This document shows, piece by piece, positions 14,435 through 28,538 of a stretch of 64,000 bases of DNA. How positions within the stretch are numbered: position 1 is the first letter of the stretch; every line of letters begins with the position of its first letter. This DNA comes from Thecamonas trahens ATCC 50062 (Eukaryota; Protista; Apusomonadida), in contig NW_013657648.1 in the NCBI RefSeq assembly GCF_000142905.1, positions 326,922-390,921 of the forward strand, read 5' to 3'. Made by a program: the position numbers and the translations under genes. The notes beneath the pieces are model-generated. The model made no database searches. It was not told the origin of the DNA and was given only the letters and a program-made list of their open reading frames with translations.

Positions 14435-14849
14435 GCTATATGCCATTGTACCCACCTTCGGCTCATCTCGCAACGTCGCCAAGGCTATGTCCATACTTGA
14501 TGCTGATCGGCTCGCGCTCCAGCAGCACGTTGGACTCGGCTGACGAAGCTCTGCTCTCGTACTCAACAAGCACAAGCGTTGGTCACCACCGGCTGGCGCC
14601 AGCAGTTCTTGACGTGGCGTGGCCGACGCTGGCTCTACTTGCTTGACCGCAGACGTGTCTGGGGTCTCAGGCACTTGGCCACGATGTGGTGGGGGAGGGG
14701 GGGACGGTGGACGATCTGGTGCAGGCGGGAGCTTGTGGTGACTTTTGACGCTGCACGAGTCATGGCCAAGATGTACGGCAGAGACTCACTGGGAGAGGAG
14801 GAATGCGCAGCAAGGGGATACTCTGCGAGGGGTGGACAGATCGCCAAGT

Positions 14850-16733
14850 ATGGGATCGCCTGCCAAGGCGAATGGTGCAGACAAGGCAGGAGGCGGCGAG
14901 GCAGGAAGCCAGTCCGAGTCAACGTCCGCGCTCTCTGCGACACTCGGGCTCGGGGGCGAGGGCCAAGAGAGCGGCGAGACGGAGGCACGGTATGTGGTAG
15001 ACGCATCGATCAAGGAGCTGTACACCATCGAGCGGCTACTGTCTGAGGGCTCATACGGAATCGTATGGAAGGGGGTGCGGAAGGAGACCGGCGAAGTAGT
15101 GGCCATCAAGAAGGTGTTTGAGGCATTCTACTCGTCGACCGATGCGCAGCGGACCTACCGTGAGGTCATGTTCCTGACACAGCTTCGGCGACACACCAAC
15201 ATTATCAAGCTCCACGGGGTTCACCCTGCGGTTAACAACCGCGACCTGTATCTTGTGTTTGAGTACATGGAGTCCGATCTGCACTCGGTCATCCGTGCTC
15301 AGATCCTGCAGAATGTCCACAAGCAGTACATTGTGTACCAGACGCTGCGGGCGCTCAAGTATATCCACTCCGGCAAGCTCTTGCACCGTGACCTCAAGCC
15401 ATGCAACTTGCTCGTCTCGTCGACATGCGAGCTGAAGGTCTGCGACTTTGGGCTCTCGCGGTCGCTGGCGACAACTTCCGAGGACCTGCCGACGTCGGCC
15501 GATCTGACGGTGTACGTGGCGACCCGGTGGTACCGTGCGCCTGAGATCCTGCTCGGGTGCCCCAAGTACACAGTGGGCATCGACCTCTGGTCGCTGGGGT
15601 GCATCATTGGCGAGCTCCTTGTGGGCAAGCCCCTGTTCCCCGGCTCATCAACGCTCAATCAGCTCGAGCGGATTTTCAATCTCATTGGGCGGCCATCCGA
15701 CGAAGATCTCGCGTCGATTGAGTCGCCCTTTGCCGCTGCCATGATGCAGCGCATCACCGCCGAGAAGACCGTCTCGTTTGCCGAGCAGTTCCCGTCGGCC
15801 TCGCTCGAGGGCGTCGACCTCATGCTCCGACTGCTGCAGTTTAACCCGGCGAAGCGAATCTCAGTCCGTGACGCCCTCCGTCACCCCTTTGTCCGCATGT
15901 TCCACAACTCGGCTACTGAGCCAGTTCTCAAGCACCCGATCCGCATCCCGGTCAACGACGATGTCAAGCACTCTAAGGACTTTTACCGCTCGGCGCTGTA
16001 CCAGGGCATGGAACAGCTCTCAGCGTTTGTCGCCGGCGACGCGGACACCGGAGACGCCGCGGTCGGCAGTCGACCCGGCGACTCGTTGTCGTCAACCTCG
16101 GTCCAGCCGTCGGGATCATCCAGCTCGGTCCAGTCGTCGTCCGAGGCCGGCTCGTCGAGCTCATCGTCGCGATGCGTCGCTGCTCGGCGTGTCTCGGACG
16201 CCGGCATCGTCTCGGTTCCCTCGTCGTCGCTCACTCCGCCACGACATGGCCTCCGCGCTCCGGTCTCGACTCCAACCGGAGATCCCGGCGAAGACGTCCG
16301 CGTCCTCGACGCCACATCGTCCTCGCCCGAGTCATGTCCTCGGTCCAAATCCAAGTCCAAGTACAAGGCCAAAGCTAAGACCAAAGCCAAGGCCAAGGGC
16401 AAAGGCAAGGCCGGAAAGGCAAAGGCAAAGGCGAAGGCCAAGGCCGACGCCGATAGTGATGGTGAAGCCAAGACAGGCCGACAGCAACGGGCCTCCACCG
16501 AGCACAGCGGGACGCTCGAGCGCAAGCGGAGCAAGAGCAAAGCTAAGGCAAAGGCAAGGGCAAAGGCAAAGGCAAAGGCCAAGACCAAGACCAAGACCAA
16601 GACCAAGGCTAAGAGCAAGACCAAGACCAAGGCTAAGAGCAAAGCCAAGGACAAGGAGCAGGCACTGCCCGACGCCGCGCCAGCTTTGGGGTCGGCCGAA
16701 TCGTCAGGCAGCTCATTCGGCTCGGGCTTTTGA
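14850..16733 (+). CDS. MAPK15: Mitogen-activated protein kinase, ERK7/MAPK15-like, with Lys-Ala/Lys-Thr-rich tail
   Basis: GSYGIVWK, VAIKKVFEAF..TDAQRTYREV, NNRDLYLVFEYMESDLH, HRDLKPCN, DFG, TVYVATRWYRAPE and LFPGSSTLNQLERI are ERK7/8 signatures. Confidence 0.9.
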   Translation: MGSPAKANGADKAGGGEAGSQSESTSALSATLGLGGEGQESGETEARYVVDASIKELYTIERLLSEGSYGIVWKGVRKETGEVVAIKKVFEAFYSSTDAQRTYREVMFLTQLRRHTNIIKLHGVHPAVNNRDLYLVFEYMESDLHSVIRAQILQNVHKQYIVYQTLRALKYIHSGKLLHRDLKPCNLLVSSTCELKVCDFGLSRSLATTSEDLPTSADLTVYVATRWYRAPEILLGCPKYTVGIDLWSLGCIIGELLVGKPLFPGSSTLNQLERIFNLIGRPSDEDLASIESPFAAAMMQRITAEKTVSFAEQFPSASLEGVDLMLRLLQFNPAKRISVRDALRHPFVRMFHNSATEPVLKHPIRIPVNDDVKHSKDFYRSALYQGMEQLSAFVAGDADTGDAAVGSRPGDSLSSTSVQPSGSSSSVQSSSEAGSSSSSSRCVAARRVSDAGIVSVPSSSLTPPRHGLRAPVSTPTGDPGEDVRVLDATSSSPESCPRSKSKSKYKAKAKTKAKAKGKGKAGKAKAKAKAKADADSDGEAKTGRQQRASTEHSGTLERKRSKSKAKAKARAKAKAKAKTKTKTKTKAKSKTKTKAKSKAKDKEQALPDAAPALGSAESSGSSFGSGF

Positions 16734-18907: not shown

Positions 18908-19294
18908 ATGAACAGTTTCGAAGAGAGCGACGACGGTGACGTCCTTCTCCCACTTGCCGAGCCCGTGTCCATCTCCGTTACCGAGCTGGACGACCATGCT
19001 GTCCTGCCACTCGCCAGCTTGGCACATGGCGCATCAGCGGCAGCCCAAGCCGAAGCTACCGCCACATCAAGAGCACAAGCGGCAGAGCCAAGTCGCCAAC
19101 GCAAGCGCCGCTGGGAGAGCCACGGGTCCACAAGCGAGTGCACTCTGTCGGGCAACGATGACATTGGGAGAACGAGGCCCATGCTAGAGGACCCCGGCGT
19201 GGAACGGGGCGGCGCGCGCGAGCTTGGCCCACGCCGCGACACGGTCGGCTTGAGCGCACGCGGGCACGGAGATCGATGCGGTGATCATTGGTGA
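18908..19294 (+). CDS. Short ORF, probably a gene 5' end fused at a rearrangement junction (possibly the N-terminus of the SWIM-RING gene)
   Basis: ATG ORF MNSFEESDDGDVLLPLAEP...RQRKRRW; runs into the 62-bp duplicated block and ends out of frame with the SWIM-RING ORF. Confidence 0.4.
   Translation: MNSFEESDDGDVLLPLAEPVSISVTELDDHAVLPLASLAHGASAAAQAEATATSRAQAAEPSRQRKRRWESHGSTSECTLSGNDDIGRTRPMLEDPGVERGGARELGPRRDTVGLSARGHGDRCGDHW
19197..19258. repeat. 62-bp direct repeat, copy 1
   Basis: gcgtggaacggggcggcgcgcgcgagcttggcccacgccgcgacacggtcggcttgagcgca, identical to 21699..21760. Confidence 0.95.
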
Positions 19295-20279
19295 CGAGAG
19301 CCTGGGCGTTTTGTCTGGGGTGGTACAGAGCTTGTCTGGAGCGACTGCTGCGTCGTCCACGACGACAAGTGCATCGAGTGCATCGAGTGCATCGACAGCG
19401 GCGCCAGCCCGGGCGAGGCGGCGGATCAGGACGAGTACGGTGGCGCAGCGGGCCAAGAAGCCAGTTGCTGACTCGGCCGAGGTCGAGGAGCGCGCGGTGC
19501 GTTGGCGAGCGCGGGCTCCTGCTGGAATGAAGCGGCGGAAGGAGCGGGCGATGTCCCAGCCGCTGTTTCTCCTCTCGGCGTCGATCGATCGCGACGTGCC
19601 GCGCGGGGAGTTTGCAGTCACCGGCTCGACTGGCAACGTCTACAACGTGGTCTTTGCCGAGAGGACGACGTGTTCGTGCCCCGACGCGGGGAAGGGCAAT
19701 GTGTGCAAGCACGCCCTCTTTGTCGGCATCAAGGTGCTTAAGATCCCATCGCGCTCGCCACTGCTGTTCAACGCCCTGCTTCCGTCCGAGCTCAAGGTGG
19801 TCTTTGCCAACCTTGCCATTGCGCGGCACGTCATGGCGTCATCGCAGGCGCAGCAGGCGTACGTGACAGCCGTGCTGGGCGAGGGCGATGCTGACGGCGA
19901 CGGCAATACAAGCGGGGCGCCTGGCGTGACCCGCAAGCCTGTCGACGGCGAGTGTCCAGTTTGCTTTGACGATCTGGACTCGGATCCGGTGGTGTGGTGC
20001 CGGGGCCAGTGCGGACAGAACCTACACAAGCGCTGCTTCGAGCAGTGGTCGGCGCACGGCGGCAAGGTGTGTGTTCTCTGCCGCGCGCCATGGCTCGAGA
20101 CCTCGCTGTCCAACGTCGAGGGCTACATCAACTTGGCCCCGTTTGAACGACGCGCCCTCACTGCACGGCTCGACCGGTACCGATCGGCCTACCAGTCCCG
20201 GTACTCGCGGAGGCGGTACAACTACGACCATGATTGGAACGAATCGGCCAGCAATAGCACAGGCAGCAGTGAAAACTGA
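19281..20279 (+). CDS. SWIM zinc finger + RING (C4HC3-type) E3 ubiquitin ligase-like protein, ZSWIM2/MEKK1 N-terminus-like; copy A (open frame, start uncertain)
   Basis: FAVTGSTGNVYNV...CSCPD...CKHALFV (SWIM) and CPVCFDDL...WCRGQCGQNLHKRCFEQW...CVLCRAPW (RING). Confidence 0.88.
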   Translation: MIIGDESLGVLSGVVQSLSGATAASSTTTSASSASSASTAAPARARRRIRTSTVAQRAKKPVADSAEVEERAVRWRARAPAGMKRRKERAMSQPLFLLSASIDRDVPRGEFAVTGSTGNVYNVVFAERTTCSCPDAGKGNVCKHALFVGIKVLKIPSRSPLLFNALLPSELKVVFANLAIARHVMASSQAQQAYVTAVLGEGDADGDGNTSGAPGVTRKPVDGECPVCFDDLDSDPVVWCRGQCGQNLHKRCFEQWSAHGGKVCVLCRAPWLETSLSNVEGYINLAPFERRALTARLDRYRSAYQSRYSRRRYNYDHDWNESASNSTGSSEN

Positions 20280-20367
20280 TAGCACTGACCCCCCACCTGT
20301 ACATGTCGACTGACGCTGGCGCCCGAACTGGTGTGTGAAAGTACGACGACGTTGCATGTAGTAGTGA

Positions 20368-21580
20368 GCGAGAATCGTTGTCGCAGCGCTTGCCGAGGAC
20401 CTTGATGACGTCCTTGCGCGTCCAGCGGTCGAGAACCAGGCCAAGTTGGAGAAGGCCGAGGCCAAGCTGAAGGAAGCTAAGGACGAGCTGAAGGAAGCTA
20501 AGGACGAGCTGGAGAGGGCCTACAATGAGCTCGAGACCAAGCGAAAGCAGGCGGAGGTGGTGCAGGCCCAGTTGCGTGCGGCGCGTGCGTCGCTCGTCCT
20601 CGGGCCGGACGTTGCACCTCTCCCGCCTGCTGCGCCGTCGCTCGACTCGCTCGCCGTCGTCGCCGGGGCGTCGAAGGCAACTCGAGAGATCATGGACGAG
20701 CACTGCGTCTTCCACAACGACGATGTGGTGGCCAACGCAGGCAAGGACCCGTCGTTTTTCGACGCCGCGTGCGGGATGGGAACGCTCCGGCAGAGCGTGT
20801 GGGAACCCCGGCCGGTCGACGCCAACGCTGTTGAGGCGCTCAAAGTCGACCTGGCGCGGCTGGTGGCGAGGCCGTCGGGCGACTGGATCGGTGTCGTGGG
20901 CAGCGTGGCGTCGGCGTCCCGCAACGTACACCTGGAGGAGACGCACAACGCGGTCCTCTCGAGCCATCTCTGCCGCCGCGAGATGCTGCGTGAGGCGCAT
21001 GTCTCCGGCCTTTCTGAGGCGTTGGAGAACGCGGCTTGCGCTGTGCGGCGCGATGCGAGCAAGATTGAGGAGGCCAACGAGGATGGCAAGTCGCAGGTGC
21101 TGTTGCACTCGCGTGAGGACGCCTACCCTTTGGTACCGGTCACTACGCCGCAAAAGTGCGAGTACTTCTGCGGCGAGCGGCAACGAGAGTTCGCAGGCGG
21201 ACATTGAGGCACGGACATCTGTTGCGGCGCTCACCGCGACGTACTTTGCGGTCGAGGCGCAGTCACCGACGTTTTCGGGCAACCCCGTCGACTTTGCGGC
21301 GAGCCTCGTGTACCACGGCGTCCGGCTTCGGCTCGCGATGTTCGAGCCCGGTAACTCGGCCAAGGAGCACCAGGCCGCCGCGTACGCGCTCAACACCTTC
21401 CGTTCGCTCTACGGCCTGCCGCCGTTTGTCACGCTCCTCGCCCTCCACGGGCGGTTCATCTCGTCGCGCGACGAGTCGGTGCCGAAGAGGCTGTACCTCG
21501 TCGGCTACCGCCTTGACGCGAGGTCTGACAAGCTCCACGCGTACTCGCTTGGCTCGGTGGACGCAGCGATGCGGATACGA
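20368..21580 (+). pseudogene. 5'-truncated, frameshifted coiled-coil + restriction-endonuclease-like (CR-REase-like) gene fragment
   Basis: No upstream ATG (TAG TGA precedes the frame). Heptad repeat KLKEAKDELKEAKDELER from a 21-bp duplication. After a frame change near 21150 it reads NPVDFAASLVYHGVRLRLAMFEPGNSAKEHQAAAYALN (D...FE...QxxxY pattern), then loses coding character near 21580. Confidence 0.5.
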
Positions 21581-21698: not shown

Positions 21699-21760
21699 GC
21701 GTGGAACGGGGCGGCGCGCGCGAGCTTGGCCCACGCCGCGACACGGTCGGCTTGAGCGCA
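21699..21760. repeat. 62-bp direct repeat, copy 2
   Basis: Identical to 19197..19258. Confidence 0.95.
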
Positions 21761-21969
21761 TACTGGTCGACATACACGCGCGCTCCGCTAGCGACGCGCC
21801 CGAGAGGTCGATTGCTCGAGGGTGTCTCCGAGTTCACGTCGGGTCTCCCGCCCGCATGGGTTGCCGCTGGGTTGCCGCTTGTTCCTTCTCCGCGCCGCGG
21901 GCCCGCGGACCAGCGCGCAACACCCCACCCAGCCCACCCCCCACGCTCACCCACCCCCCCCCCACGGCC

Positions 21970-23865
21970 ATGCTCCGGGCAGGAGCACACGTACTGGGTG
22001 CGTGCCTCCGCCTCTCCCCCGTGCTCCGCAGGCCGGCTCGTGCCCTGGCCACCCACCCCCCCACCCCCACCCCCGCCCCCCTCGTGAGCCCTGCGTTCTT
22101 CCCCGTCGGCCGCTCCAACTTTAAGCGCATCCGTGCGTCGGGCGCGTTCTACGTCGACCATACGCGGTTTCTCGAGGTGTGGGAGCGCGTCGGTGAGGAC
22201 GGGTACACGACGCTGCTCCGGCCGCCGCGGTTCGGGAAGACTCTGATGCTGGACATGATGGCTGCGTACTACGACGCGGGAGTCGGGGCGGACGAGCACG
22301 ACCGGCTCTTCCACGGGCTCTACATCGGCGAGAACCCCACGTCCGGCGCCCGGGCGCATCACGTGCTGCGGCTCAACCTTGCGCCAAGCGCGAGCGTGGG
22401 CGCGTCGTTCGACATGCAGGCATTTCTGGATGATGCGGTAGATGACGCCCTGGTGGACTTTGTGGAACGGTACAATCTCGCAGTGCAGAGGGAGCGGCCA
22501 TTTGAGATGCGGGACATCAAGCGTGTCGTCGGCGCTGTGGGCCGGGCGGGCGGGCGGGTAATGGTGCTCATCGACGAGTACGACCGGGTGGCGAACGAAC
22601 TGATGGTGAAGGATAAGGACGCTTACGCGCGGAGCGTGATGGGCGTGTCGGGCGAGGAGGCGTCGTCGCCGCTGCGGTCGCTCCTGACAACGTTCAAGAT
22701 GGCCCAGGACCGGGCGCCAGTTACGCTCCTCATGACGGGGCTCACACCCATTGTCCTGGCCGACGTGTCGGCGTACAATGTGGCGCGCAACCTGACGCTC
22801 CGCGAGGAGTTTGGGGACTTTTTCGGGTTCACGTCCGGGGACATCGAGCGCGGGCTCACAACGGCTGGGCACGGGTCGGGTGATATTGCTGCGGCGCTGG
22901 CGGTGATGCGCAAGTGGTACAACGGGTACCTGTTCCCTGGCGCGTCGCAGCGGGTGTTCAACCCGCAGATCTCGCTCCACTTTATGGACTTGTTCACGTC
23001 GAGTGCCAGGGTCAAGGAAGCGACGCTGCGAGGCGTCATTGCACCGGACGACTTGGTGTCGCGAAACCTGCGCGTCACAGAGTCCATGCTGAGCGTGCTG
23101 GCGACGAGCCGTGCTGGTGCCGGACCGCTCGCCAAGCTCCTGGGCGGGGACGCGACGTACACGCTTGAGGGGCGCGTAGTGGACGAGTTCCGCTTCTCGG
23201 ACCTCATGCGGTGGAACCTGGAGGGTGTAGAGTCCGAGTCGGAGGACAAGTTCTGCTCGTACCTCTACTACCATGGCGCGCTGACGTTCGCCGAGAAGCC
23301 AGGGATGCTGCCGCCGGACAAGCTGAGCATCCCGAACGAGCTCGTGCGGCGCGAGTTCTGGGATGCGCTTCCGAAGCGGCTTCGCGACGCGGTGCTCAAG
23401 ACGCTCGACGCGGCGTTTGCGGCCGGGCCGCAGGCTTCGGCCGAGCTGTGGGAGGACATCTTCTCGGCGCTGAACGAGCGTAGCGCGGCGGGCATTGCGG
23501 ACACGTCGAGGGTCGACGAGCATGCGTTCCGCGGGATGCTGTTGTGGATGACGGGCAACGAGGCAGTGAGTGTGCAGACCGAGGTCGCGGCGCCCCGGCA
23601 GAGCTCGGAAGGTGCGGGCACGGGCCGGGTCGACCTGGTGGTGGAGCATGTCAAGTCGCCGACGCGGTTCGTGATCGAGCTTAAGCGCGTGAAGGGGAGC
23701 GGGCCCAAGGCGCTCGCGGGGGCCGTCGAGCGTGCTGCCGAACAGGTGGCCGACTACGACTTGTCGGCGGTTCCAAAGGCCGCGCACGTGACGCACGACG
23801 TGCGGCTCGCGGTGGTGCTCGCCGACGACGATGTGGTCGTGCGCGTGGTGGGCGATGAGGAGTAG
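21970..23865 (+). CDS. AAA-ATPase-like (PF09820-type) + C-terminal PD-(D/E)XK nuclease (PDDEXK_9-type) protein with mitochondrial-presequence-like N-terminus
   Basis: FPVGRSNFKRIR...FYVDHT, Walker A LRPPRFGKTL, Walker B VMVLIDEYD, WYNGYLF, VFNPQ, YLYYHGALT, LSIPNELVR, then TEV...GRVDLVV...FVIELKR...AAEQVADY. Intronless; ATG at 21970 follows a C-rich leader. Confidence 0.9.
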   Translation: MLRAGAHVLGACLRLSPVLRRPARALATHPPTPTPAPLVSPAFFPVGRSNFKRIRASGAFYVDHTRFLEVWERVGEDGYTTLLRPPRFGKTLMLDMMAAYYDAGVGADEHDRLFHGLYIGENPTSGARAHHVLRLNLAPSASVGASFDMQAFLDDAVDDALVDFVERYNLAVQRERPFEMRDIKRVVGAVGRAGGRVMVLIDEYDRVANELMVKDKDAYARSVMGVSGEEASSPLRSLLTTFKMAQDRAPVTLLMTGLTPIVLADVSAYNVARNLTLREEFGDFFGFTSGDIERGLTTAGHGSGDIAAALAVMRKWYNGYLFPGASQRVFNPQISLHFMDLFTSSARVKEATLRGVIAPDDLVSRNLRVTESMLSVLATSRAGAGPLAKLLGGDATYTLEGRVVDEFRFSDLMRWNLEGVESESEDKFCSYLYYHGALTFAEKPGMLPPDKLSIPNELVRREFWDALPKRLRDAVLKTLDAAFAAGPQASAELWEDIFSALNERSAAGIADTSRVDEHAFRGMLLWMTGNEAVSVQTEVAAPRQSSEGAGTGRVDLVVEHVKSPTRFVIELKRVKGSGPKALAGAVERAAEQVADYDLSAVPKAAHVTHDVRLAVVLADDDVVVRVVGDEE

Positions 23866-25021: not shown

Positions 25022-26063
25022 CGCGGGCACGGAGATCGATGCGGTGATCATTGGTGACGAAAGCCTGGGCGTGTTGTATGGGGTGGTACAGAGCTTGTCT
25101 GGAGCGACTGCTGCGTCGTCCACGACGACGAGTGCATCGAGCGCATCGACAGCGGCGCCAGTCCGGGCGAGGCGGCGGACCAGGACGAGTACGGTGGCGC
25201 AGCGGGCCAAGAAGCCAGTTGCTGACTCGGCCGAGGTCGAGGAGCGCGCGGTGCGTTGGCGAGCGCGGGCTCCTGCTGGAATGAAGCGGCGGAAGGAGCG
25301 GGCGATGTCCCAGCCGCTGTTTCTCCTCTCGGCGTCGATCGATCGCGACGTGCCGCGCGGGGAGTTTGCAGTCACCGGCTCGACTGGCAACGTCTACAAC
25401 GTGGTCTTTGCCGAGAGGACGACGTGTTCGTGCCCCGACGCGGGGAAGGGCAATGTGTGCAAGCACGCCCTCTTTGTCGGCATCAAGGTGCTTAAGATCC
25501 CATCGCGCTCGCCACTGCTGTTCAACGCCCTGCTTCCGTCCGAGCTCAAGGTGGTCTTTGCCAACCTTGCCATTGCGCGGCACGTCATGGCGTCATCGTA
25601 GGCGCAGCAGGCGTACGTGACAGCCGTGCTGGGCGAGGGCGATGCTGACGGCGACGGCAATACAAGCGGGGCGCCTGGCGTGACCCGCAAGCCTGTCGAC
25701 GGCGAGTGTCCAGTTTGCTTTGACGATCTGGACTCGGATCCGGTGGTGTGGTGCCGGGGCCAGTGCGGACAGAACCTACACAAGCGCTGCTTCGAGCAGT
25801 GGTCGGCGCACGGCGGCAAGGTGTGCGTTCTCTGCCGCGCGCCATGGCTCGAGACCTCGCTGTCCAACGTCGAGGGCTACATCAACTTGGCCCCGTTTGA
25901 ACGACGCGCCCTCACTGCACGGCTCGACCGGTACCGATCGCCCTACCAGTCCCGGTACTCGCGGAGGCGGTACAACTACGACCATGATTGGAACGAATCG
26001 GCCAGCAATAGCACAGGCAGCAGTGAAGACTGGTAGCACTGACCCCCCACCTGTACATGTCGA
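25022..26063 (+). pseudogene. SWIM-RING duplicate, copy B, with premature stop
   Basis: Near-identical to 19259..20309. CAG>TAG at 25599-25601 lies between the SWIM and RING domains. The Ser-Ala tract is 9 bp shorter and the stop differs (GAC TGG TAG vs AAC TGA). Confidence 0.9.
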
Positions 26064-27622: not shown

Positions 27623-27867
27623 CGCCACCGTAAATCGCCATCACGCCGCCATTCGTCCAACAACCCCCATCGGCCACCCTTTATCAGTCATCCCCCATCG
27701 CTAGGCCTCATCGGGCACAAGCTGTCCCCGCACGATGCATTGCAAGCACACTCCAGATAGAAACGCCCGATGCCAACGGTGTCCGGGCATTCGTGTGATC
27801 CAGCACCTGCCGTCGAGGGCGTATGCCATCGGCACAAGAAACAAAGAGCGCGTCGCCGCCGAGAGCG

Positions 27868-28296
27868 CCAACCGGCAGCCGATGAACAGCGAGCGGGAGA
27901 GCGGCCAGCAACCGGCAGCCGACGAGCAGCGAGCGGGAGAGCGGCCAGCAACCGGCAGCCGACGAACAGCGAGCGGGAGAGCGGCCAGCAACCGGCAGCC
28001 GATGAACAGCGAGCGGGAGAGCGGCCAGCAACCGGCAGCCGACGAACAGCGAGCGGGAGAGCGGCCAGCAACCGGCAGCCGACGAGCAGCGAGCGGGAGA
28101 GCGGCCAGCAACCGGCAGCCGACGAACAGCGAGCGGGAGAGCGGCCAGCAACCGGCAGCCGATGAACAGCGAGCGGGAGAGCGGCCAGCAACCGGCAGCC
28201 GACGAACAGCGAGCGGGAGAGCGGCCAGCAACCGGCAGCCGATGAACAGCGAGCGGGAGAGCGGCCAGCAACCGGCAGCCGACGAGCAGCGAGCGG
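27868..28296. repeat. 40-bp minisatellite, >10 near-perfect units, running into an assembly gap
   Basis: Unit accggcagccgaYgaRcagcgagcgggagagcggccagca. Confidence 0.97.
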
Positions 28297-28538
28297 NNNN
28301 NNNNNNNNNNNNNNNNNNNNNNNNNNNNNNNNNNNNNNNNNNNNNNNNNNNNNNNNNNNNNNNNNNNNNNNNNNNNNNNNNNNNNNNNNNNNNNNNNNNN
28401 NNNNNNNNNNNNNNNNNNNNNNNNNNNNNNNNNNNNNNNNNNNNNNNNNNNNNNNNNNNNNNNNNNNNNNNNNNNNNNNNNNNNNNNNNNNNNNNNNNNN
28501 NNNNNNNNNNNNNNNNNNNNNNNNNNNNNNNNNNNNNN
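28297..28538. other. Assembly gap (others at 30473..30572, 45117..45359, 53446..53751)
   Basis: Runs of N, each flanked by minisatellite or G/C-homopolymer-rich sequence. Confidence 1.

What the first reader, a model, noticed from the sequence alone, without database searches (positions are those of the whole stretch)
21970..23865. Bacterial-type AAA-ATPase + PD-(D/E)XK nuclease with a mitochondrial-presequence-like leader in a protist genome
Seen: an intact, intronless 631-aa ORF with Walker A (RPPRFGKT), Walker B (LIDEYD) and a complete C-terminal nuclease motif (E...GRVD...IELK...Q..DY). Its first ~30 aa (MLRAGAHVLGACLRLSPVLRRPARALATH) are Arg/Leu/Ala-rich and lack acidic residues. Established: the AAA-ATPase_like + PDDEXK_9 architecture is mainly bacterial, often multicopy, of unclear function, and patchy in eukaryotes. 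Inference: a horizontally acquired NTPase-gated nuclease retargeted to mitochondria, acting as an organelle defence, cell-death or selfish effector. Its position in a rearranged island next to a second REase-like relic supports a conflict-system hotspot.
Basis: partly seen in the sequence, partly recalled or inferred. Interest (0 to 1): 0.8.

Follow-up and report, generated by a model that had tools for sequence, protein, structure and literature searches.

The report
Mitochondrial-type ATPase-nuclease shared by protists
This Thecamonas gene encodes a bacterial-type ATPase fused to a DNA-cutting domain, and it belongs to a previously undescribed group found in several free-living protists whose members nearly all carry what looks like a mitochondrial import signal.

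Summary
Window 21970-23865(+) is an intact 631-aa ORF in Thecamonas trahens (public locus AMSG_12037). It has a PF09820 ATPase domain (E=3.8e-30), intact Walker A and B motifs, and a complete C-terminal PD-(D/E)XK set (E517, D555, E570, K572, Q592).

The public model removes residues 12-40 as an intron. That intron fits none of the splice signals seen in 10 of 10 homology-defined Thecamonas introns. A 59%-identical relative encodes a leader of the same length within one ORF. The leader is therefore probably translated.

The "fresh HGT into one protist" reading is not supported. An exhaustive HMMER search and trees place the protein in a eukaryote-only clade (UFBoot 99, SH-aLRT 94). Named members include Naegleria, Willaertia, Balamuthia, Clydonella, Parvularia and Amoeboaphelidium. 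The clade is nested within bacterial DUF1703 proteins.

Clade members carry N-terminal extensions (median 42 aa, against 4 aa in bacteria). Most are basic, lack acidic residues, and many end in R-x-F/L-S/A. This supports mitochondrial targeting in silico only.

The "REase relic" and "conflict hotspot" ideas found no support. The biological role is unknown; an ATP-gated mitochondrial DNA nuclease is an inference.

The parts
21970..23865 (+). Coding sequence of the 631-aa ATPase-nuclease (public locus AMSG_12037), stop codon included
21970..22101 (+). N-terminal leader, residues 1-44. It comprises a basic amphipathic part (about residues 1-27, with an R-A-L|A site at 24-27) and a Pro/Thr-rich linker that ends just before the conserved FPVG motif.
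   Evidence: Composition and hydrophobic moment. Disordered in the AF2 model. Leaders of the same length and type occur in relatives.
22002..22088 (+). 87-nt intron of the public gene model (GTGCCT...GTGAG). It is in frame, has no stop, and is probably not a real intron.
   Evidence: Compared with 10 homology-defined Thecamonas introns.
21856..21858 (+). Additional in-frame ATG, 38 codons upstream of the ATG at 21970. Whether it is used is unknown.
22102..22767 (+). AAA-ATPase_like (PF09820) P-loop domain, residues 45-266
   Evidence: Fold resembles ORC/Cdc6, CED-4/NLR and the archaeal ATPases 2qen and 2fna.
22219..22242 (+). Walker A RPPRFGKT, with the eukaryote-type Pro at position 86
22567..22587 (+). 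Walker B LIDEYD followed by the eukaryote-type Arg206
23518..23850 (+). C-terminal PD-(D/E)XK nuclease domain, residues 517-627, with E517, D555, E570, K572 and Q592
21699..21760 (+). 62-nt segment X in the 5' flank, 100% identical to 19197-19258
25022..26063 (+). Segment S (SWIM-RING gene copy B), 98.1% identical to 19259-20309. X and S are adjacent in the upstream copy and 3261 nt apart here.

Best explanation
The ORF is a genuine nuclear gene of Thecamonas trahens. It encodes a member of a eukaryote-specific clade of the DUF1703 family: a PF09820 P-loop ATPase with a C-terminal PD-(D/E)XK nuclease.

Shown here:
- The ATPase and nuclease motifs are intact.
- The predicted fold is an ORC/Cdc6/STAND-like ATPase module followed by helical domains and a restriction-endonuclease-like domain.
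- The protein belongs to a eukaryote-only clade that is nested within bacterial sequences.
- An N-terminal extension of about 40 residues is shared by the clade and absent from bacterial relatives.

Inferred:
- The extension is a cleavable mitochondrial presequence, possibly cut by the processing peptidase near R-A-L|A (residues 24-27).
- The mature protein therefore works in the mitochondrial matrix.
- ATP binding or hydrolysis by the N-terminal module switches or assembles the protein and licenses the nuclease to cut DNA. The most likely substrate is mitochondrial DNA or foreign or aberrant DNA in the organelle.

The intron in the public model is most likely a prediction artefact.
For: Domains and motifs.

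Structure: AF2 model with pLDDT 88.2 and pTM 0.85, with residues 1-40 disordered. Foldseek matches 2qen, Cdc6, ORC, CED-4, NLRs and 2fna at E=2e-6 to 1e-4. The nuclease domain modelled alone matches Cas4 SSO0001, AdnAB, human MGME1, the R2 endonuclease, SduA and Hjc.

Eukaryotic clade: the exhaustive HMMER search found closer hits than the word search. Eukaryotic neighbours (Ras, SH2, Ank, kinases) are on the JGI contigs. Clade support is SH-aLRT 96 with 84 rows, and UFBoot 99 / SH-aLRT 94 with the clade present in 100% of 200 bootstrap trees. Signature residues: P86 in 22/23 eukaryotic against 0/66 bacterial sequences, and R206 in 21/23 against 0/66. Thecamonas has both.

Leader: median extension is 42 aa (n=27) against 4 aa (n=69), and 16 of 27 pass a crude presequence rule. 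RRFST-, RSFST- and RRFAAT-type ends occur in Naegleria and others. The 59%-identical relative encodes a 41-42-aa leader beginning MLR in one ORF, with a stop 22 codons upstream. Thecamonas mtHSP70 and GUF1 presequences are of the same style. GC3 of the leader (0.82-0.93) matches the gene body (0.86) and exceeds the flanks (0.59-0.73).

Intron: 10 of 10 homology-defined Thecamonas introns begin GTAYG and end YAG, and most have a CTCAC branch-like motif. The annotated intron has GTGCCT, GAG and no CTCAC.
Against: - No localisation data, and no dedicated targeting predictor could be run.
- The public gene model removes most of the leader, and I could not inspect RNA-seq.
- Only 10 introns were sampled, so atypical introns cannot be excluded.
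- Eleven of 27 clade members with complete N-termini fail the crude presequence rule. A few have acidic N-termini.
- The truncated copy of a Naegleria gruberi mitochondrial proteome supplement contains no match to the N. gruberi homologue.
- The Pfam nuclease hit is below threshold.
- Some eukaryotic paralogues have lost D555 or the E-x-K motif, so nuclease activity is not universal in the clade.
- Many 'eukaryote-type' rows come from metagenomes and are called eukaryotic only by signature or N-terminal extension.
- The Thecamonas branch is long (1.2-1.3 changes per site) and its composition deviates.
Confidence: 0.6

Rival explanations
1. The leader is not a mitochondrial presequence. The protein is cytosolic or nuclear, either because the annotated intron is real (giving a 602-aa product with only about 13 residues before the domain) or because the extension is a disordered linker or another kind of signal.
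For: The public model AMSG_12037 splices out residues 12-40. GC-rich DNA readily yields Arg/Ala-rich, acid-poor peptides, and the untranslated in-frame region upstream is also Arg-rich. Some clade members have acidic or short N-termini. No hit was found in the truncated N. gruberi mitochondrial proteome file.
Against: The splice signals of the annotated intron match none of 10 verified introns. Leaders recur in AT-rich Naegleria and in a transcript-derived Clydonella ORF, so they are not a GC artefact. The close relative has a leader of the same length in one ORF. R-x-F/L-S/A ends are typical of sites cut by the processing peptidase (established knowledge).
Confidence: 0.22
2. A recent, lineage-specific horizontal transfer from bacteria into Thecamonas that then gained a presequence.
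For: The word-based search returned only bacterial-context hits at 24-33% identity besides the self-hit. The family is rampantly transferred and multicopy in bacteria (PMC6387759). Thecamonas lacks the insert between E-x-K and Q that most eukaryotic members have.
Against: The exhaustive search found eukaryotic relatives that score better than any bacterial one. The eukaryote clade including Thecamonas has UFBoot 99 / SH-aLRT 94. Thecamonas shares the P86 and R206 signatures and the leader. Gene GC and GC3 are host-like, and the gene lies on a 401-kb nuclear scaffold.
Confidence: 0.07
3. The gene is a selfish or decaying element in a conflict-system hotspot and has no host function.
For: It is flanked by a recent local duplication: X 100% and S 98.1% identical. 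Bacterial relatives often sit near toxin-antitoxin and transposase genes.
Against: It is single-copy. The ORF is intact with all catalytic residues. There are no terminal repeats or target-site duplications at the junctions. The neighbouring 'REase relic' has no detectable family. There is no PADLOC match. The clade is conserved across distant protists.
Confidence: 0.06

Closest known systems
DUF1703 proteins (PF09820 AAA-ATPase_like + PF08011 PDDEXK_9) of bacteria, for example the expanded family in Cardinium cCpun, Simkania and Rickettsia (PMC6387759; nuclease classified in PMC1913061 and PMC3424549)
   Same: Same two-domain architecture and length, the same Walker A/B motifs, WYNGY motif and E...D...E-x-K...Q nuclease motifs. 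Function is unknown there as well.
   Different: The Thecamonas protein belongs to a eukaryote-only subclade marked by RPPR[FW]GK instead of RPRRFGK and by IDEYDR. It has an N-terminal leader of about 40 aa that bacteria lack. Its Pfam nuclease score is below threshold.
Eukaryotic 'AAA-ATPase-like domain-containing' hypothetical proteins of Naegleria (e.g. NAEGRDRAFT_78045, XP_044552051), Willaertia, Balamuthia, Clydonella, Parvularia and Amoeboaphelidium
   Same: Same clade, same signature residues and presequence-like leaders; 31-37% identity.
   Different: Most have a 30-80-aa insert between the E-x-K and Q motifs that Thecamonas lacks. They are often multicopy, whereas Thecamonas has one copy. 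None is characterised in the literature I could search.
ORC/Cdc6 and STAND ATPases (Cdc6 1fnn, ORC, CED-4, plant and animal NLRs) and the archaeal Walker-type ATPases PABY2304 (2qen) and SSO1545 (2fna)
   Same: Best structural matches for the N-terminal two thirds: a P-loop core plus helical or winged-helix-like domains. This suggests a nucleotide-dependent switch or oligomerisation module.
   Different: Only fold-level similarity (TM 0.2-0.5, 9-14% identity). None of these carries a fused PD-(D/E)XK nuclease. No sequence-level match to any PDB chain.
MGME1, the human mitochondrial PD-(D/E)XK nuclease, and Cas4/AddB-type nucleases
   Same: Among the best fold matches of the C-terminal domain. 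MGME1 is a precedent for a PD-(D/E)XK nuclease acting on mitochondrial DNA.
   Different: Weak matches (E=2.6e-4 to 1e-2). No Fe-S cluster motif or RecB-type context was seen. MGME1 has no ATPase module. No orthology is implied.

Membership tests
DUF1703 (PF09820 + PF08011 architecture) | [quoted passage not shown] | tested here: met
   Pfam E=3.8e-30, 105.7 bits against a cut-off of 26.1. G89, K90, D202 and D205 are invariant in 90 sequences.
DUF1703 (PF09820 + PF08011 architecture) | C-terminal PDDEXK_9 domain reaching Pfam's gathering score | tested here: inconclusive
   18.3 bits against a cut-off of 25.5, E=0.0023. Eukaryote-clade members generally lack a precomputed PF08011 hit.
DUF1703 (PF09820 + PF08011 architecture) | PD-(D/E)XK catalytic residues and alpha-beta-beta-beta-alpha-beta core | tested here: met
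   E517, D555, E570, K572 and Q592 align with residues conserved in 64-66 of 66 bacterial members. The domain model (pLDDT 84.9) has that topology and hits only PD-(D/E)XK nucleases at the top.
Eukaryote-type DUF1703 subclade (defined here) | Groups with named eukaryotic sequences to the exclusion of bacterial ones | tested here: met
   SH-aLRT 96 with 84 rows. UFBoot 99 / SH-aLRT 94 with the clade in 100% of 200 bootstrap trees, 44 rows, PMSF model.
Eukaryote-type DUF1703 subclade (defined here) | Signature residues Pro86 (RPPR-GK) and Arg206 (IDEYDR) | tested here: met
   P86: 22/23 eukaryotic, 0/66 bacterial. R206: 21/23 eukaryotic, 0/66 bacterial. Thecamonas has both.
Mitochondrial matrix-targeting presequence | N-terminal 15-60 residues that are basic, acid-free, hydroxylated or hydrophobic, and amphipathic | tested here: met
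   5 Arg and 0 Asp/Glu in 44 residues. Maximum hydrophobic moment 0.84, reached by 2-4% of shuffles. Style matches Thecamonas mtHSP70 and GUF1 leaders. This was a crude calculation only.
Mitochondrial matrix-targeting presequence | Processing-peptidase site (Arg at -2 or -3) | tested here: inconclusive
   R-A-L|A at residues 24-27 fits the R-3 pattern by eye. RRFST, RSFST and RRFAAT occur in relatives. No cleavage predictor was available.
Mitochondrial matrix-targeting presequence | Positive call by a trained predictor, and experimental localisation | not testable with these tools
   No TargetP or MitoFates was available. The proteome look-ups were uninformative.
Known anti-phage defence systems (PADLOC v2), including RADAR RdrA, for which a review (PMC10952713) lists PF09820 | Significant match to a defence-system protein model | tested here: not met
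   Only a 36-residue HamB hit at E=0.0048. The PF09820 listing comes from the review read.
ORC/Cdc6 - STAND AAA+ ATPases | Fold of the P-loop core plus following helical or winged-helix domains | tested here: met
   Foldseek probability 1.00, E=2e-6 to 1e-4, but TM only 0.2-0.5. This shows resemblance of fold, not membership.

The most novel reading that the evidence does not exclude
The clade is an old, vertically inherited mitochondrial ATP-gated nuclease. It would have been acquired from bacteria before the split of Amorphea and Discoba, retained only in free-living phagotrophic protists, and lost in animals, fungi and plants. It would serve as an organelle DNA-surveillance or recombination factor, for example destroying damaged, linear or foreign DNA in the matrix.
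Probability: 0.2. Interest if true: 0.8.

Novelty: new variant of a known kind. Interest (0 to 1): 0.55.

Why it matters
DUF1703 ATPase-nucleases are common in bacteria, but no function has been tested for them. Here they have a eukaryote-only branch present in at least four deep lineages: Heterolobosea, Amoebozoa, Holomycota protists and Apusomonadida. That branch has a conserved import-signal-like leader.

If the proteins are mitochondrial, they add a new bacterial-derived enzyme to protist mitochondrial DNA metabolism. They would also give a tractable entry point to the function of the whole family, because Naegleria and the amoebozoans can be cultured.

The work also flags a probable error in the public gene model, an artefactual intron that hides the leader. 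It shows too that the word-based protein search missed the true nearest relatives.

Tried and rejected
**Searches that gave nothing**
- NCBIfam: no family.
- PADLOC: nothing usable.
- PDB by sequence profile: only E=0.13.
- The search for related loci with the single protein found nothing.
- The search for homologous proteins with the eukaryote alignment A3 was swamped by bacterial candidates and returned no eukaryotic members.
- The look-up of encoding contigs for P0001 and P0192: not on record.
- Literature searches for AMSG_12037, NAEGRDRAFT_78045 and 'AAA-ATPase-like domain' with mitochondria found nothing relevant.

**Proteome look-ups**
- The N. gruberi mitochondrial proteome supplement of PMC8134430 is stored truncated. 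It holds no match to the locus tag or to three short peptides, so the result is inconclusive.
- The Acanthamoeba mitoproteome paper has no supplement held.

**Ideas tested and dropped**
- Alternative upstream intron. A CTCAC at 21946 and a CAG at 21980-82 could form a 3' splice site inside the leader. The only GTAYG donor upstream (21382) would join an Arg-rich junk frame, so I rejected this.
- A pattern scan of the whole window for intron signatures was too noisy to use.
- 'REase-like relic' at 20368-21580: no Pfam family in either frame and no Atlas hit.
- Cassette mobility: no target-site duplication, microhomology or terminal repeats at 19258|19259, 21760|21761 or 25021|25022. Insertion versus deletion could not be polarised.

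**Technical failures**
- The first 110-row mixture-model tree did not finish.
- L152 downstream of residue 318 does not continue the gene, perhaps because the low-coverage contig is chimeric.

I built and searched no joined spliced model. The 602-aa product came from the database as P0001.
Full report
**What is there.** The window is Thecamonas trahens ATCC 50062 (an apusomonad), contig C32 of a 28.7-Mb assembly.
- ORF 21970-23865(+) is open for 631 codons.
- Pfam gives PF09820 AAA-ATPase_like at E=3.8e-30 (residues 45-266) and a sub-threshold PF08011 PDDEXK_9 hit at E=0.0023 (residues 549-612).
- Walker A (RPPRFGKT, 84-91), Walker B (LIDEYD, 200-205), WYNGY (316-320) and the nuclease residues E517, D555, E570, K572 and Q592 are all present.
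- They align with invariant or nearly invariant columns of the family.
- The gene is single-copy in its genome.
- It lies on a scaffold of about 401 kb with host-like GC (0.66) and GC3 (0.86). It is therefore not contamination.

**The leader and the annotated intron.** The database holds the public product AMSG_12037 (P0001, 602 aa). It is identical to the ORF except that residues 12-40 are missing.
- This corresponds to an 87-nt, in-frame, stop-free intron at 22002-22088, with donor GTGCCT and acceptor GTGAG|.
- To judge it, I defined Thecamonas introns by homology in conserved genes from the same genome: HSP70 paralogues, actin and an Arp, eIF5B and a Ras (sequences read).
- All 10 begin GTAYG and all end YAG (9 CAG, 1 TAG). 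Most have an [A/C/G]CTCAC motif 15-35 nt before the acceptor.
- The annotated intron has none of these three features.
- GC3 across the leader (0.82 overall, 0.93 in the 'intron') matches the gene body (0.86) and exceeds both flanks (0.59-0.73).
- The strongest evidence comes from the nearest relative in the exhaustive search, P0126. It is 59% identical over residues 47-287 and lies on a metagenome contig of 60% GC (L152).
- P0126 has a 41-42-residue leader that begins MLR, continues into a Ser/Thr/Pro-rich linker, and meets the same FFPVG motif, all in one ORF. An in-frame stop lies 22 codons upstream of its ATG.

I conclude that the leader is probably translated and the public intron is probably an artefact. 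I could not inspect RNA-seq. A further in-frame ATG at 21856 would only lengthen a basic, acid-free N-terminus. I did not build or search any joined spliced sequence.

**Relatives.** The word-indexed search returned only the self-hit plus proteins of 24-33% identity.
- Those proteins sit in compact, bacterial-looking neighbourhoods with toxin-antitoxin genes, a transposase, and GntR- and HTH-type regulators.
- A scan of bacterial genomes showed this subfamily to be multicopy and scattered over Latescibacterota, Vicinamibacterales, Spirochaetia, Gammaproteobacteria and SAR324.
- On this evidence alone the gene would look like a lone horizontal transfer.
- The exhaustive HMMER search (4053 hits at E<=1e-3) changed the picture. 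After P0126 and P0127, the best hits are 31-37% identical proteins of 600-750 aa.
- Where these are named, they are eukaryotic: Naegleria lovaniensis (three paralogues), N. gruberi, N. fowleri, Willaertia magna, Balamuthia mandrillaris, Clydonella sp., Parvularia atlantis, Amoeboaphelidium occidentale and an MMETSP transcript.
- Unnamed JGI members lie on 72-167-kb contigs beside Ras, SH2, ankyrin, chromo and tyrosine-kinase genes.

**Phylogeny.**
- In an 84-row tree (LG+G4, quick), all 41 eukaryotic or eukaryote-type rows including Thecamonas form one clade (SH-aLRT 96). Its sister is a bacterial clade containing Candidatus Kentrum, Thiosymbion, Parabeggiatoa and Rhodobacteraceae and Anaerolineales MAGs. 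The joint node has support 99.
- A careful 44-row tree under the site-heterogeneous PMSF model gives the eukaryote clade UFBoot 99 / SH-aLRT 94, and the clade appears in 100% of 200 bootstrap trees.
- In that tree Thecamonas is sister to the rest (93/91). Parvularia and Amoeboaphelidium, both Holomycota, group together (98/97). Naegleria and Willaertia group together (100/100).
- Two independent signature residues agree. Pro86 occurs in 22/23 eukaryotic and 0/66 bacterial sequences. Arg206 occurs in 21/23 and 0/66. Thecamonas has both.

The protein is therefore of bacterial type and ultimately of bacterial origin, but it is not a Thecamonas-specific acquisition. The data cannot separate one old transfer followed by loss from spread among eukaryotes. 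Caveats are the long, compositionally deviant Thecamonas branch and the metagenomic origin of many rows.

**Is the leader a mitochondrial signal?**
- Among sequences with complete N-termini, the stretch before the conserved FPYG motif has a median of 42 residues in the eukaryote type (n=27) and 4 in the bacterial type (n=69).
- Sixteen of the 27 pass a crude rule: at least 15 residues, with no Asp/Glu and at least 2 Arg/Lys in the first 20.
- Many end in the R-x-F/L-S/A pattern typical of processing-peptidase sites. Examples are RRFST and RSFST in Naegleria and RRFAAT and RRFLST in environmental members. Thecamonas has R-A-L|A at 24-27.
- The pattern holds in AT-rich Naegleria and in a transcript-derived Clydonella ORF, so it is not a by-product of GC-rich DNA.
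- Bona fide Thecamonas mitochondrial proteins read from the genome (mtHSP70, a second DnaK-type HSP70, GUF1) have leaders of the same style.
- The Thecamonas leader has a high hydrophobic moment, reached by 2-4% of shuffles, and is disordered in the structure model.

This is consistent, comparative, in-silico support. It is not a localisation.

**How it probably works.**
- The full-length AF2 model is confident (pLDDT 88.2, pTM 0.85).
- Its N-terminal two thirds resemble the archaeal Walker-type ATPases 2qen and 2fna, Cdc6/ORC subunits, and the STAND ATPases CED-4 and NLRs (Foldseek E=2e-6 to 1e-4).
- The C-terminal domain modelled alone (pLDDT 84.9) has the alpha-beta-beta-beta-alpha-beta core. 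Its top matches are PD-(D/E)XK nucleases: Cas4 SSO0001, AdnAB, human mitochondrial MGME1, the R2 endonuclease, SduA, Exo5 and Hjc.
- The reasonable inference is a nucleotide-dependent switch or oligomerising module that controls a metal-dependent DNA nuclease.
- What it cuts, and why, is unknown. No function has been tested for any family member (PMC6387759), and it matches no known defence-system model.

**Surroundings.**
- Segment S (19259-20309) recurs at 25022-26063 (98.1% identity). The 62-nt segment X (19197-19258) recurs at 21699-21760 (100% identity).
- X and S abut in the upstream copy. In the downstream copy they are separated by 3261 nt, which contains this gene.
- S carries a SWIM-RING gene. 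It is intact in copy A and split by a stop in copy B.
- The junctions show no target-site duplication, microhomology or terminal repeats. This is a local duplication with an insertion or deletion whose direction I cannot determine. It is not evidence of a mobile cassette.
- The proposed second REase-like relic (20368-21580) has no Pfam family in either frame and no Atlas hit.

**Verdict.** The lone-HGT and conflict-hotspot ideas are not. The finding is best described as a new, eukaryote-specific, presequence-bearing variant of the known DUF1703 family. I found no description of it in the searchable literature.

Noticed in passing
window 22002-22088: The public gene model AMSG_12037 contains an 87-nt in-frame intron whose donor (GTGCCT) and acceptor (GAG) do not match Thecamonas splice signals. 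It is probably an annotation error, and it hides the N-terminal leader.
   Followed up: yes
own-genome loci L086, L089-L092, L110, L115, L144, L151: Thecamonas introns show very uniform signals: donor GTAYG, a branch-like [A/C/G]CTCAC 15-35 nt before the acceptor, and acceptor YAG (10 of 10 homology-defined introns). This is typical of intron-poor genomes.
   Followed up: partly
L092 (C17:111250-111480), L100 (C22:227800-227960), L101 (C10:319020-319180): Conserved HSP70 and Cpn60 genes change frame without any intron, one of them with two TGA codons. These look like single-base indel errors in the assembly, so apparent frameshifts or nonsense codons elsewhere (for example SWIM-RING copy B) may not be biological.
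   Followed up: no
window 19259-20309 and 25022-26063; 19197-19258 and 21699-21760: A recent local duplication of a SWIM-RING gene (98.1% identity) plus a 62-nt segment (100% identity). The junctions are clean and lack transposon hallmarks. Copy B is split by a stop between SWIM and RING.
   Followed up: partly
window 27789-28348: A tandem array with a 40-nt period (at least 10 overlapping 200-nt registers, 71-100% identity) lies inside overlapping ORFs on both strands.
   Followed up: no
window 16352-16651: Imperfect AAGGC/AAGAC-type repeats encode a Lys/Ala/Gly/Thr-rich low-complexity stretch within the ORF 14745-16733(+).
   Followed up: no
loci L005-L083 (bacterial genomes): The bacterial subfamily nearest by the word search is multicopy. 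It has up to five loci per genome in some Spirochaetia MAGs and two loci about 7 kb apart in a Latescibacteria MAG. It is shared by Latescibacterota, Vicinamibacterales, Gammaproteobacteria, SAR324 and Longimicrobiales at 56-87% identity, which implies frequent transfer.
   Followed up: no
protein P0192: A long-branch sequence with the bacterial-type P-loop (RPRRFGK) but a 45-residue presequence-like N-terminus falls as sister to the eukaryote clade. It could be an early-diverging eukaryotic member. Its contig is not on record.
   Followed up: partly
L089 and L090 (own genome): Two DnaK-type HSP70 genes have their presequence-like first exon (starting MLRATT... and MFRLVL...) separated from the domain by an intron placed right after the leader.
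   Followed up: no
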